From Parasitella parasitica NRRL 2501 (taxonomy: Eukaryota > Fungi > Mucoromycota), in NCBI GenBank assembly GCA_025201805.1, contig MU619273.1, positions 124,001 to 188,000 on the forward strand: 64,000 nt of DNA, given 5' to 3'. Every line of letters starts with the position of its first letter. Position 1 is the first letter of the stretch. Below, piece after piece: positions 52,596 through 56,540 of this stretch. The notes below the pieces were generated by a model that was not told the origin of the DNA, did no database searches, and saw only the letters and a list, made by a program, of their open reading frames with translations. The translations under genes were made by a program, and so were the position numbers.

Positions 52596-53733
52596 CTAAT
52601 TGATCTTTTTTGCGCTTGTTTGTATTGCTTTGCTATATTCATAGCCTGCAAAAAACAATGGCAATGTGAAGGAACTGGACATGAGAGGCGTTACGGCGAT
52701 GAGAATCCATACCCAGGAAGGGACATGCTGATAGTCTCTTTGGCTGACAGTGTACATCCATGCCACAGAAATTAATTGCATGCAAACAATGTCGTAACTG
52801 ACACTCGATTGGGCTGGATGACTGAAAAATGTGGTAATTGCAGTGTCATATATCTGGTACCATGTGTGCTGATTAAATGGTGCCAATGTTGCCAAACAGG
52901 TGAACCACTGATTGGCATAGATAGAGAGATTGGCACCTGCCGCCAACGCGTACAAGACAGCGGCATAAGTGGATGCACTCTTTGACGACAATGGTGTTGA
53001 TGATTCAGTGTAAACTAGAGGAAAAATGAGCAAAATATGCATAGCCAAAAGATTCCCCATGAATGCATCTGTGTCGGCAACAAATGGGCACAAAACCACA
53101 GTAAGAATACCTCCAACAGATGACAGTGTTAAAGTTTTCAGTAACCTGGAAGACGGCTGTCTGTTTGAAAAAGGCTCAAAGGTCAACAAGACGGCAAAGA
53201 AGAGAGAAGCCGCAAAAGAAATAGCCACAACTTGACCGAGAAGCATGTAAGTCCAAATATACGGAATACGTCGTCTTGTGCCTGTGTTTAGCCCAATCTG
53301 TTTGTTTTCAAATGCTCATGTTCAGAATTCACCATGGCTTACCTTCAATCGCTAAAATGGGAGTCCAAACTGACACGGTCAGAGTGCATATTTGGTGGCT
53401 CCACAACCATTGCCAAGCACCAACACAAACTTTTCTCCAGGCACTATCGAACAAAGATACGTCTTTGAGCCAATACGACATTGAATTCAGTGATAACGGC
53501 TGCTCGTATCTAGCAAGTTGCTTCCATTCTTGATAGCTATGTGCAAAGAACTTGAACATGTAGGTCCATGTAGAAAGTAATGATATCAAAGACAAGAGAG
53601 CAAACAAAATGACTCCCGGGTGATTGAAGTAATACACCATTTGAAGTTCGCGCTTCACTCTCCACACCAAAACAAAGATAAGTGCAAAATAAGACGCAAG
53701 AATTGCAACTGTAAATGGATGTTCTACGTTCAT
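52596..53733 (-). CDS. Uncharacterised multi-pass membrane protein, 2 exons
   Basis: Several hydrophobic helices. Motifs STWTYMFKFF.HSY, WL.D.SLFD.AW, W.WS, YMLLGQVVAISFA.SLF and HPAQSSVSYD. Confidence 0.8.
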
Positions 53734-53929
53734 TGCGTGTGTGGTTGTTATATGGTGGTATATTAAACAGAAGAAAAAAGGGGAGGGGGGTGGTTGTGTG
53801 ATGGCATTTTTAAAACAGCCCTTTAATATGAATCTGCATTTTGCGCTATACATATTATTTTTATTAAATCAGGAAAACCCGCTTTTGCATTATTATTATT
53901 ATTATAATCATCACCATCATCATCAACGG

Positions 53930-56540
53930 TTAAATTTCCACAAGTATAATTGTACAATCATCGTAATCTTGCAATTTAGATGCGAAGAAGCCATGAGCCC
54001 CTTCTCTGTTGGCAAAGTATCTAGCAGAATGAACAAGCGTACGTTCTCTAATTTTGCGTGCTCGGAGATCCTCCTCGTCTAATTCTTTATGCAAGAGAGG
54101 CGCTGGTGGCAATGGCTCCTCATTTTCTGTTTGCTGCGGTGCTTTCAATTCAACGCTCATGGGAGATCCAGCTTGCTCTTCATGCATCGTTGTGAAACTA
54201 TCACCGTTTACAATGTCAATATGACCACCTTCTTCAACTACACTGGCAGCTTCCTTTCCAAGTCTTTTCTTTGCAGTGTAGTCTTGTTTCAACTTTTCTT
54301 CTTCGTCCAGTAGATAGTGACCAATCTTCTCGCCATCTTCAATCATAGGACCCAGTGTCTTGGCAATAGCTTTATTCTGTCTGTCTGCCGTTTCTTCGTA
54401 CATGTAGTCAAAGGTACCGTCTGTGCTCATAAACAAAAAGTGCCTTCGCTTCTCTTTGTTCGGGCCATTTCTGATGGTTGTGCGAGAACCTCTTCTTGTA
54501 TCTGCTATGCGGATAAATGTGACATCAGGTTCACATGAAATGATTTTGCGGTCTGGATCCATCTTGAAGTCTAAATCACCACAGGAACGCGCTACGTTCA
54601 GCGAAGGTACTCGATCTCGATCCCGTTCCTCTGTTGCTCCAAACCGACTATTAGAACTGTGCCCTTCTGTTTTCGGTGAGAATATTGACGGATCAGTTCC
54701 TGTCTGATAATCCTTGGGCCTAATCCTTGCATTCTTGAGAGATATACGTTTAGCATGTCGATTTTTGTCCTCCCTCAACTTGTCCACGTCTACTTTAATG
54801 ACCCTGTTTTGAACAGAATCCACAAACTCGCCACCATTCTCCAAGATGTGGCGGGCCAAGTGCTCCAAGTAGGGTTTATGGTCTTGTGAAGCGAATTCAA
54901 CATCAAAATTATAGTCTTTATCGATGCCGACAGTGTATGGTGTAGTTACAGGTAGCGGGGTACTAGGTTCAGGAGCAGAAATTAATACTGAACGAGAGTC
55001 TCCAATATTCACATTAATGAGCCATTCGCCAAAGAACAAATTCAGAATAAGCGTACATCCATCATTATCTACCTTTTCGTTCAGGTTCTCTTTAGATGCC
55101 ATCTGTTGTCGCTTTATATCCAGATAACTGTCGTCCAATTGTTGAATCATGGTTTTTATATTCTTTTCTAGTTTTGCTCGTACGGTTGGATCGTTCAGTT
55201 TTGAAGGGACAAACTTTGAGCATACGGCCTGAACAGCCTGAGGCGTCTTTCTCACAAAGTATTCAGAGCAACCTGGGCCTCCATGGCCATCCGCCAACAC
55301 AAACAAACGCCCTACCACTCGCTTGTTTTTGGATATATCACTGACTCTATATTTGTCTTCGCAATGTATTTTGGGAATCTTAATTTTTTCATGCGAGCGA
55401 AAACGAGGGTATGAATAGCCTTTTTGTTGGACAATGGCAAAATTGCTGGCTACGTTGTACTCTGTGAAATTGATCGGGTCGATGTAATCTAGGTCTGCTG
55501 TAGGAGGTGAGAATACTAAAGAGTAGCTTGCTATTGTATCTTCAATCACTTCTGGCTGTTGTGGTGGTTGTAGTGGCACTGCCTTTGGTCCCTGTGAAGC
55601 GCCCAAAAGTTCCTCATAGTCAGACCCTAATCCCATTGAATCAAAGCTCCTATGTTAATTTTTTTTTTTTTTTTTAAAAAAAAAGGCCATTTTATAATTG
55701 ATTTAAAACGTACGCTGCATCATCGCTGCTTTCATAGTCATTTCCGCCGTCATCGTCTTTGTAAATTGGCACTTGCATTTGCTCTTCGAGAGATTGATCA
55801 CCTTCCACATCGATATCAGATTGGCTTGCTGATTCAGCTGGTATTGATTCGGTTATCGTTGGTGTTGAATCTTTGACAGCGTCTTTAGCTACATTATGTT
55901 TTGGCTTTTTGGCTTGTGGTCTTTTCCTAGTCTTTGCTGATACTCGTAACTTTTCGGTTGGCTTATATACGTCTGGTGCTTTGCGCTGGCGTTTTCCTGA
56001 ATATGAAATGTGGCTGTAAGGCAGTACAGGAAGTACCGTAACTGGTTCATCTGGAACTGTTTTCATTCTGGGTAGAACAGCATTGCCGACAAGTTCGTCT
56101 GAAAGCTTGTATTTAGTTTGTTTCCTTGCATCATCCCGCACGATGGAGAATGGATCTATAAGCTTTGCAGTTCTACATATTCCTCTTGAAGAAGATACAA
56201 TCCCTTGAATAGTGCTTCTTGGTGTTTCGCCTCTACATACCAATATAAAATAAAAAAAATTTAAAAAAAAAAAAATAAAAAAAAAAGAAAGCCAAGCATG
56301 AAAGCACACGCGCTTTTGTATATGGACTGTAAAGTATTACCTCAACGGCAGTAATTCCAAAGCTCGTACACAATTTACTATCTCTCCGGCTGTTAATGCT
56401 TGATTCCCGTAATAGAAAATGGTAGCAGCGACTTTCATAAAAGAACTATTTGCTCTTAGCTGATCACAGATGTTTAGTCCCTTGAGCTCAGTATCGAGAG
56501 GCTCATGCTCAATTTTTCCTGATTCTGTATCTGTTGCCAT
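53930..56540 (-). CDS. Fusion protein: N-terminal HARE-HTH-like winged helix, basic/acidic linker, and PP2C (PPM) Ser/Thr phosphatase; 3 exons (56540-56341, 56232-55714, 55649-53930)
   Basis: PP2C motifs ADGHGG, DGCT, NIGDSR, DHKP, LNVARSCGD, STDGTFD and DDCTIILV. N-terminal SFMKVAATIF....ALTAGEIV..V....L..LRGETPRSTIQGIVS. Canonical introns at 56233-56340 and 55650-55713 keep one frame. The PP2C call is very secure; the fusion is inferred from splice signals. Confidence 0.8.

What the first reader, a model, noticed from the sequence alone, without database searches (positions are those of the whole stretch)
53930..56540. Hidden spliced fusion of a HARE-HTH-like DNA-binding domain to a PP2C phosphatase
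Seen in sequence: the ORF track lists 55692-56309 and 53930-55636 separately, only 55 bp apart on the same strand. A canonical 64-nt intron (minus strand 55713..55650; donor gc|gtacgt, branch attaac, acceptor catag|g) removes the upstream stop and gives ...SSDDA-A-SFDS-MGLGSD... in frame. A further intron (56340..56233) adds exon 1. Established: the N-terminal pattern SF.K.A..I......LT..EIV.....L....G.TP..TI matches HARE-HTH winged helices (ASXL, HB1, RNA polymerase delta), and the PP2C metal-binding Asp motifs are all present. Inference: this is a chromatin- or DNA-targeted PP2C with a basic NLS-like linker and large insertions in the catalytic domain. I do not know this architecture from characterised fungal PP2Cs (Ptc1-7).
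Basis: partly seen in the sequence, partly recalled or inferred. Interest (0 to 1): 0.8.

Follow-up and report, generated by a model that had tools for sequence, protein, structure and literature searches.

The report
Winged-helix PP2C phosphatase gene, already annotated
The two neighbouring reading frames are exons of one three-exon fungal gene that joins a small winged-helix domain (GDS1/HARE-HTH type) to a divergent PP2C phosphatase. The gene model is already in public annotation and is conserved across Mucoromycota, so only the identity of the N-terminal domain is new.

Summary
Exons 56540-56341, 56232-55714 and 55649-53933 on the minus strand are separated by introns of 108 and 64 nt. Their product is exactly an 812-aa protein already annotated in NCBI for Parasitella parasitica ("phosphatase 2C-like domain-containing protein"), so the fusion is real but not hidden.

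- **Conservation.** Both introns keep their position and phase (2) in eight other Mucoromycota genera. A JGI contig (L001) carries the whole homologue as one uninterrupted ORF.
- **C-terminal part.** It is a divergent PP2C: Pfam 44 bits, Foldseek E 2.5e-13 to PPM1B, motif residues conserved, several large inserts.
- **N-terminal ~100 residues.** They fold as a confident winged helix (pLDDT 89.8).
- **Family of the N-terminal domain.** Strict HARE-HTH membership fails: there is no PF05066 hit on this protein. The nearest family is the fungal WH_GDS1 domain (PF25318), whose members themselves give weak HARE-HTH hits. Support comes from hhalign (94.9 %, P 4.8e-8, shuffles P >= 0.03), reciprocal HMM hits, and an intron at the same column and phase as in the genome's own GDS1-like gene.
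- **Distribution.** An exhaustive HMMER search finds this N-terminal domain only in this PP2C family, in Mucoromycotina and Glomeromycotina.

Chromatin or DNA targeting is inference. Interest is moderate.

The parts
56341..56540 (-). Exon 1 (ATG at 56540; 66 codons plus 2 nt). Encodes the N-terminal tail and helices 1-2 of the winged helix.
   Evidence: Identical to P0001 residues 1-66.
56233..56340 (-). Intron 1: 108 nt, gtaata...tag, phase 2, inside the winged-helix domain just before G-E-T-P.
   Evidence: Same column and phase in Umbelopsis, Phycomyces (two genes), Absidia, Cunninghamella, Sporodiniella, Rhizopus and Rhizophagus. Same column and phase as the intron of the genome's GDS1-like gene.
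55714..56232 (-). Exon 2: helix 3 and wing of the winged helix, a basic K/R-rich linker, then an acidic stretch.
   Evidence: Identical to P0001 residues 68-239.
56079..56495 (-). Span that encodes the winged-helix domain (about residues 16-118; includes intron 1).
   Evidence: AF2 model of the homologous 111 residues of L001: pLDDT 89.8, order H-b-H-H-E-E. Generic winged-helix matches at Z 7-8.7. hhalign to WH_GDS1 94.9 %. The family-wide conserved columns R29...Y108 are.
55893..56000 (-). Basic NLS-like linker (SGKRQRK...KTRKRPQAKKPKH; residues 145-180).
   Evidence: Sequence. K147, R148, R150 and K151 are conserved in at least 90 % of 39-45 homologues. The NLS function is inferred.
55650..55713 (-). 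Intron 2: 64 nt, gtacgt...attaac...ag, phase 2. It removes the stop that ends ORF 55692..56309.
   Evidence: Phase-2 intron at the corresponding linker position in six of nine mapped loci.
53930..55649 (-). Exon 3 (1 nt, 572 codons, then stop TAA at 53932..53930): the remaining linker and the whole PP2C domain.
53933..55534 (-). PP2C (PPM) catalytic domain with large inserts: a long helix at exon-3 residues 421-473 and disordered segments at 317-344, 384-398 and 475-513.
   Evidence: PF00481 44.4 bits against a cut-off of 20.3. Family profile against the PDB: 2I0O at 7e-9. AF2 pTM 0.78. Foldseek E 2.5e-13 to PPM1B, with about 510 aligned columns reaching the C-terminal strand.

Best explanation
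This is a single-copy, three-exon gene of Parasitella parasitica (Mucorales) encoding an 812-aa protein. The protein has an N-terminal winged-helix domain of the GDS1/HARE-HTH lineage, a basic NLS-like linker followed by an acidic linker, and a divergent but apparently active PP2C (PPM) Ser/Thr phosphatase with several large inserts. The architecture arose once and is kept throughout Mucoromycotina and Glomeromycotina. Shown here: the gene structure, the PP2C family and fold, the winged-helix fold, the remote homology to WH_GDS1, and the restricted distribution. Inferred: the winged helix, together with the basic linker, brings the phosphatase to the nucleus and to DNA, chromatin or a transcription-associated complex, where PP2C removes phosphates from nearby proteins. 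The precedents are yeast Gds1, which is recruited to promoters with NuA4, and the HARE-HTH domains of ASXL and RNA polymerase delta.
For: - **Gene model.** The exons give P0001 exactly. Both introns are conserved in position and phase. L001 (JGI 3300010866) carries the full-length homologue as one ORF of 874 codons (167-2788), with no intron where all genomic loci have one.
- **Architecture.** All 45 eukaryote-annotated homologues start with the same domain. The Geosiphon protein P0093 does too.
- **PP2C.**. Conserved in 90 % or more of homologues, most of them invariant: E337 D338, D360 G361 H362 G363 G364, G456 D457 S458 R459, D496 H497 K498 P499, G597 D598, D650 G651, D803 D804.
- **Winged helix.** AF2 pLDDT 89.8. 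Many winged-helix families at Z 7-8.7. ESM Atlas leads to HARE-HTH clusters.
- **GDS1 link.** Sub-threshold PF25318 hits over 71 of 95 positions in P0078, P0079, P0093 and P0070. hhalign of 50 N-termini against 61 bona fide WH_GDS1 domains gives Prob 94.9, P 4.8e-8 and 91 columns; the reversed template and 30 column shuffles give P >= 0.03. Reciprocal HMM hits of 25-30 bits land on the right domain. The phase-2 intron sits in the same column as in the genome's own WH_GDS1 gene.
- **GDS1 to HARE-HTH link.** Bona fide WH_GDS1 proteins hit PF05066 at E 3e-4 to 0.07.
- **Gds1 biology.** bioRxiv 10.1101/2021.07.27.454094.
Against: - No Pfam winged-helix model reaches its curated cut-off on any family member, and this protein itself gets no hit at all.
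- PDB comparisons show only a generic winged helix, with no HARE-HTH-specific match.
- The N-terminal model was made on the L001 homologue (53 % identical to this protein over the domain), not on the window's own sequence, because an intron splits the domain here.
- There are no transcript data for Parasitella itself.
- No experiment on any family member was found.
- HARE-HTH and GDS1 domains are not uniformly DNA binders, so the target of the winged helix is open.
- Assigning the conserved Asp residues to metal ligands rests on motif knowledge, not on a residue-level structural superposition.
Confidence: 0.75

Rival explanations
1. The N-terminal domain is a protein-protein adaptor or an intramolecular regulator of the phosphatase, not a DNA or chromatin reader. 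It could dock PP2C on a specific partner complex or gate the active site.
For: Yeast Gds1 is known from its association with NuA4, not from direct DNA binding. From general knowledge, the HARE-HTH domain of RNA polymerase delta contacts polymerase. Structural matches are to the generic winged-helix fold, which serves both roles.
Against: The adjacent conserved basic tract and the GDS1/HARE-HTH kinship fit nucleic-acid or chromatin contexts. Nothing tested here separates the two roles.
Confidence: 0.3
2. The N-terminal domain is a lineage-specific winged helix whose likeness to GDS1/HARE-HTH is convergent or reflects only the shared fold.
For: All Pfam hits are below the curated cut-offs. Single-sequence HMMER against 1.84 billion proteins finds no GDS1 or HARE-HTH protein. 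No other winged-helix family was available as a specificity control for hhalign.
Against: hhalign gives P 4.8e-8 over 91 columns against P >= 0.03 for 31 controls. Reciprocal HMM hits fall exactly on the domain. The G-x-T-P motif is shared, and the intron column and phase are identical.
Confidence: 0.15
3. The two ORFs are separate genes, and the joined model is an annotation artefact repeated across genomes.
For: There are no Parasitella transcript data. In every genomic locus examined, an intron lies between the winged-helix exon and the PP2C exon.
Against: L001 has one uninterrupted ORF through both domains. Splice sites, phase and position are conserved over the deep Mucoromycotina-Glomeromycotina split. 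The Met at 55636 is not conserved in the family consensus. The exon 2 frame stays open right up to the donor.
Confidence: 0.03
4. The PP2C domain is a pseudophosphatase that serves only as a scaffold.
For: It is very divergent: phmmer finds no PDB hit, and the Pfam match covers only profile positions 36-199 of 255. It also carries large inserts.
Against: All canonical acidic motif residues are invariant or nearly invariant across 39-45 homologues. The fold is complete.
Confidence: 0.05

Closest known systems
PPM/PP2C Ser/Thr phosphatases (PF00481; human PPM1A/PPM1B, plant HAB1/ABI1, yeast Ptc1-7)
   Same: Same fold (Foldseek E 2.5e-13). The Pfam hit is above the cut-off. The DGHGG, GDSR, DHKP, DG and C-terminal acidic motifs are conserved.
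   Different: Very divergent: no PDB hit with the single sequence. It has several large inserts, including a helix of about 50 residues and a disordered segment of about 40. The last motif reads DDCT rather than the usual DN. It carries an N-terminal winged helix. By sequence the clade is confined to Mucoromycota. Its relation to the Ptc1-7 clades was not tested.
WH_GDS1 domain (PF25318) of yeast Gds1 and the fungal GDS1-like/APSES proteins (Parasitella P0100)
   Same: Profile-profile homology over the whole domain. Shared G-x-T-P at the start of helix 3. The phase-2 intron is in the same column. The domain is N-terminal in both proteins.
   Different: Family members score below the Pfam cut-off: best 22.9 bits against 27, and this protein gets no hit. 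The partner domain is PP2C rather than KilA-N/APSES.
HARE-HTH (PF05066; ASXL1-3, plant HB1, RNA polymerase delta, bacterial Mrr-type restriction enzymes)
   Same: Winged helix with the same order of secondary-structure elements. ESM Atlas features and structure lead to HARE-HTH clusters. WH_GDS1 members give weak PF05066 hits.
   Different: There is no PF05066 hit on this protein. The best in orthologues is 12.5-14.2 bits against 25.9. No HARE-HTH structure appears among the top PDB matches.

Membership tests
PP2C / PPM (PF00481) | Pfam model above the gathering score | tested here: met
   44.4 bits on exon 3 and 42.6 bits on P0001, against a cut-off of 20.3. 44 of 45 homologues match.
PP2C / PPM (PF00481) | PPM beta-sandwich fold, including the C-terminal strand | tested here: met
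   AF2 pTM 0.78. Foldseek E 2.5e-13 to PPM1B and 6e-13 to PP2Calpha, TM by target 0.5-0.78, about 510 aligned columns.
PP2C / PPM (PF00481) | Conserved acidic residues of the binuclear metal centre (motifs ED, DGHGG, DG, D[N]) | tested here: met
   E337 D338, D360 G361 H362, D650 G651 and D803 D804 are invariant or at least 90 % conserved. Their assignment to metal ligands follows motif knowledge, not a residue-level superposition.
PP2C / PPM (PF00481) | Metal-dependent phosphatase activity | not testable with these tools
   Needs an enzyme assay.
HARE-HTH (PF05066) | Pfam model above the gathering score (25.9 bits) | tested here: not met
   No hit at E <= 10 on P0001, on nine other homologues or on L001, and none in the six-frame genome search. 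P0078 scores 12.5 bits and P0082 14.2 bits.
HARE-HTH (PF05066) | Winged helix-turn-helix fold | tested here: met
   AF2 pLDDT 89.8; H22-33, bridge 39, H41-50, H61-78, E85-90, E95-100. Winged-helix matches at Z 7-8.7.
HARE-HTH (PF05066) | Specific structural or sequence similarity to solved HARE-HTH domains | tested here: inconclusive
   No PDB sequence hit. The top Foldseek and VIA rows are other winged-helix families. ESM Atlas rows are HARE-HTH clusters, TM 0.79 by row, which is a lead only.
WH_GDS1 (PF25318) | Pfam model above the gathering score (27 bits) | tested here: not met
   Best scores are 22.9 bits (P0078), 22.6 (P0093), 19.7 (P0079) and 15.2 (P0070). P0001 gets no hit.
WH_GDS1 (PF25318) | Profile-level homology to bona fide members | tested here: met
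   hhalign Prob 94.9, P 4.8e-8, 91 columns; controls give P >= 0.03. Reciprocal hmmsearch gives 25-30 bits on the domain.
WH_GDS1 (PF25318) | Shared gene-structure marker with a bona fide member | tested here: met
   A phase-2 intron lies in the codon before G-x-T-P in both the PP2C gene and P0100/L012.
Fungal Ptc1-7 subfamilies | Orthology to a named yeast PP2C | not tested
   No yeast Ptc sequences were fetched. Hits outside Mucoromycota were only two chytrid PP2Cs at E about 1e-10.

The most novel reading that the evidence does not exclude
The GDS1/HARE-HTH-type winged helix could read a DNA or chromatin mark, for example the abundant promoter-proximal 6mA of early-diverging fungi. It would then station a PP2C at marked genes to dephosphorylate the transcription machinery or histones, giving a direct link between a DNA mark and protein dephosphorylation. 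HARE-HTH has been proposed as a 6mA-discriminating module (PMC4738411). Readers of fungal 6mA are stated to be unknown (PMC12695648).
Probability: 0.08. Interest if true: 0.8.

Novelty: new variant of a known kind. Interest (0 to 1): 0.4.

Why it matters
PP2C phosphatases usually gain specificity from accessory domains or partners. Here a whole fungal phylum-level lineage, which includes the agents of mucormycosis and the arbuscular mycorrhizal fungi, keeps a PP2C permanently fused to a winged helix related to that of Gds1, a NuA4-associated promoter factor, and to HARE-HTH. Public annotation names only the PP2C part, so assigning the N-terminal domain gives a testable hypothesis: a nuclear, chromatin- or transcription-coupled phosphatase specific to Mucoromycota. 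It does not reveal a new gene or a new principle.

Tried and rejected
- **Pfam and NCBIfam on the separate exons.** Exons 1 and 2 gave nothing, as expected because intron 1 splits the domain.
- **PF05066 over the whole genome.** No match.
- **PDB sequence searches.** phmmer with the N-terminal domain and with exon 3 found nothing. The family profile found only PP2Cs.
- **Foldseek and VIA-align on the N-terminal model.** Generic winged helix only.
- **Two metagenome scans.** No confirmed locus.
- **Exon-piece alignment A3.** It was meant to give an N-terminus-only profile for the large searches. MAFFT misplaced GETPxSTIQ, so A3 was not used.
- **Representative search.** Two hits, P0090 and P0095, are bacterial PKD-repeat proteins and were rejected as spurious multi-repeat matches.
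- **Aravind & Iyer 2012 (PMC3272235).** Not held, so whether that paper lists this architecture is unknown. Searches for HARE-HTH with PP2C or phosphatase, and for PP2C with Mucorales, found nothing relevant.
- **Single-exon continuity.** I looked for a winged-helix exon that runs on into PP2C in other genomes. None does; all have the linker intron.
- **Joined model.** The joined product was handled only as database protein P0001. The exon-mapping scripts concatenated exons internally, solely to test identity with P0001 and its orthologues.

Full report
**Observation**

The ORF list shows 55692..56309 and 53930..55636 on the minus strand, 55 bp apart. On the minus-strand sequence, the 64-nt stretch 55713..55650 has gtacgt at its 5' end, attaac 5 nt before its 3' end, and ends in ag. 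Exon 2 ends gc| and exon 3 begins g, so the junction reads ...SSDDA-A-SFDSMGLGSD in frame.

The 108-nt stretch 56340..56233 (gtaata...tag) joins ...LELLPL to GETPRSTIQ through a split Arg codon (ag|a).

A word search with exon 3 returned P0001, an 812-aa NCBI protein of Parasitella parasitica named "phosphatase 2C-like domain-containing protein", at 100 % identity. Its sequence is exactly exon 1 + R + exon 2 + A + exon 3. A script confirmed the exon coordinates 56540-56341, 56232-55714 and 55649-53933.

**How the joined model was handled**

The joined product was used only as database protein P0001. The exon-mapping scripts concatenated exons internally, only to test identity with database proteins.

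**Is the splice real?**

I mapped annotated orthologues onto their genomic loci: Umbelopsis, Phycomyces (two genes), Absidia, Cunninghamella, Bifiguratus, Sporodiniella and Rhizopus. Rhizophagus was mapped for intron 1 only.
- Intron 1 lies in the same alignment column at phase 2 in 8 of 9 loci.
- Intron 2 lies within two columns at phase 2 in 6 of 9 loci.

No genome has the winged-helix exon running directly into the PP2C exon. However, contig L001 (JGI sample 3300010866, 3060 nt) carries a full-length homologue as one uninterrupted ORF of 874 codons (167-2788). It has no intron at the position where the related Umbelopsis gene has a 253-nt intron. L001 therefore looks like a transcript-derived contig, although I could not confirm the sample type.

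The gene appears to be single copy in this genome. Its downstream neighbour is a DUF2834 membrane-protein gene, as in Absidia, Cunninghamella and Phycomyces.

**C-terminal domain**

Exon 3 hits PF00481 PP2C at 44.4 bits against a cut-off of 20.3. The single sequence finds nothing in the PDB. The family profile finds PP2C 2I0O at 7e-9, followed by plant and human PP2Cs.

An AlphaFold2 model of exon 3 (pTM 0.78) matches PPM1B, PP2Calpha, Wip1, HAB1 and others at Foldseek E 1e-13 to 1e-9. The alignments cover about 510 columns and include the final strand.

The motif residues are invariant or at least 90 % conserved in 39-45 homologues: CED (337-338), DGHGG (360-364), GDSR (456-459), DHKP (496-499), GD (597-598), DG (650-651) and DDCT (803-806). 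Low-confidence or extra elements mark the inserts: 317-344, 384-398, a helix at 421-473, and 475-513 (exon-3 numbering). This is a divergent PP2C that is probably active.

**N-terminal domain**

Residues about 16-118 are strongly conserved. Because intron 1 splits the domain in the window, I used the uninterrupted homologous stretch L001:167-499, which is 53 % identical to this protein, as a proxy.

With the family alignment, AlphaFold2 gives pLDDT 89.8 and the order H-b-H-H-E-E, a winged helix. Foldseek and VIA-align against the PDB return many winged-helix families: forkhead, H1, Fur, ArsR, MarR and YceH, with Z up to 8.7. None stands out, and no HARE-HTH structure is listed.

PF05066 (HARE-HTH) does not hit this protein or most homologues. 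The only hits are 12.5 bits in Funneliformis and 14.2 bits in an Endogone fragment. ESM Atlas points to HARE-HTH clusters both by features (0.82) and by structure (TM 0.79 by row), but these are leads only.

**The better match: WH_GDS1**

Scanning all 45 members showed sub-threshold hits to PF25318, the GDS1 winged-helix domain. The Glomeromycotina orthologues score 22.9, 22.6 and 19.7 bits against a cut-off of 27, over profile positions 5-75 of 95. A Phycomyces paralogue also hits.

The Parasitella genome has one bona fide WH_GDS1 gene: G000:C162, protein P0100, 101.6 bits, with a weak KilA-N/APSES domain. I sliced 50 PP2C N-termini and 61 WH_GDS1 domains from tool-returned proteins and compared them.
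- hhalign gives probability 94.9 %, P 4.8e-8 and 91 aligned columns.
- A reversed template and 30 column-shuffled templates give scores of 8.5-16.9 and P >= 0.03.
- Each family's HMM hits the other's domain at 25-30 bits, in the right place.
- The alignment sets PLR|GETP against TLG|GATP, and both genes have a phase-2 intron in exactly that codon.

Bona fide WH_GDS1 proteins themselves hit PF05066 at E 3e-4 to 0.07. No other winged-helix family was available as a specificity control for hhalign.

**Distribution**

An exhaustive HMMER search of 1.84 billion representatives with the N-terminal domain gave 19 hits at E <= 1e-3. Seventeen are this PP2C family or fragments of it: Umbelopsis, Hesseltinella, Apophysomyces, Spinellus, Bifiguratus, Endogone, Rhizopus and Geosiphon. 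Two are spurious bacterial PKD-repeat proteins.

At this sensitivity the domain is therefore found only fused to this PP2C, in Mucoromycotina and Glomeromycotina. No Mortierellomycotina, Zoopagomycota, chytrid or Dikarya protein was recovered. The two chytrid PP2C hits lack the domain.

**Mechanism**

Shown: one gene, a winged helix of GDS1/HARE-HTH ancestry, a conserved basic tract (GKRQRK...), an acidic tract, and an intact-looking PP2C.

Inferred: the basic tract acts as an NLS or DNA-contact region. The winged helix tethers the enzyme to DNA, chromatin or a transcription-associated complex, and PP2C dephosphorylates nearby substrates. The closest functional precedent is yeast Gds1, which is recruited to promoters and co-purifies with NuA4 (bioRxiv 10.1101/2021.07.27.454094). 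HARE-HTH has been proposed as a reader of modified DNA, including 6mA (PMC4738411), and readers of fungal 6mA are unknown (PMC12695648). That link is speculative here, because chytrids and Mortierellomycotina were not found to carry this fusion.

**Novelty and verdict**

The gene and its architecture are already in public gene models, so nothing was hidden. What appears unrecorded, in the annotation and in the literature I could search, is the identity of the N-terminal domain and hence the winged helix-PP2C architecture as a Mucoromycota-specific family. The one paper most likely to list HARE-HTH architectures was not readable. I rate this a new variant of a known kind, of moderate interest.

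Noticed in passing
G000:C162:42220-45952 (L012 1438-1634 and 1690 onward; L014 473-3952): The genome's one bona fide WH_GDS1 gene (P0100, 1224 aa) combines the GDS1 winged helix with a weak KilA-N/APSES domain. Its phase-2 intron is in the same domain column as intron 1 of the PP2C gene. Orthologues occur in Mucoromycota, Mortierellomycotina, Zoopagomycota and chytrids.
   Followed up: partly
window 52596-53853 (-): The downstream neighbour is a multi-pass membrane protein with DUF2834 (28.4 bits). The arrangement of PP2C followed by DUF2834, with a CUE-domain gene upstream in other genera, is syntenic in Absidia, Cunninghamella and Phycomyces. The window's upstream side was not examined.
   Followed up: partly
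P0002 versus P0001: A second assembly labelled Parasitella parasitica encodes an orthologue only 86 % identical over the PP2C part, and 74 % for the GDS1-like protein (P0101 versus P0100). That is a large divergence for one named species.
   Followed up: no
P0090 and P0095: Bacterial PKD/Ig-repeat proteins reached E 2e-10 and 9e-4 in the single-sequence HMMER search by summing 8 and 3 weak repeat matches. This is a reminder that multi-stretch hits to repeat proteins can pass the threshold spuriously.
   Followed up: yes
window 56233-56340 and 55650-55713 (-): Both introns carry long homopolymer runs: T-runs of about 30 nt in intron 1 and an A-run of about 17 nt in intron 2. Intron 1 is a multiple of 3 (108 nt) but contains in-frame stops, so its retention would truncate the protein after the first half of the winged helix.
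   Followed up: no
L004 and L010 (Phycomyces); P0024 and P0059 (Sporodiniella); Rhizopus P0013, P0028 and P0058: Several Mucorales keep two or more paralogues of the winged helix-PP2C gene, some shorter (584-666 aa) with more divergent winged helices. Parasitella appears to have one.
   Followed up: partly
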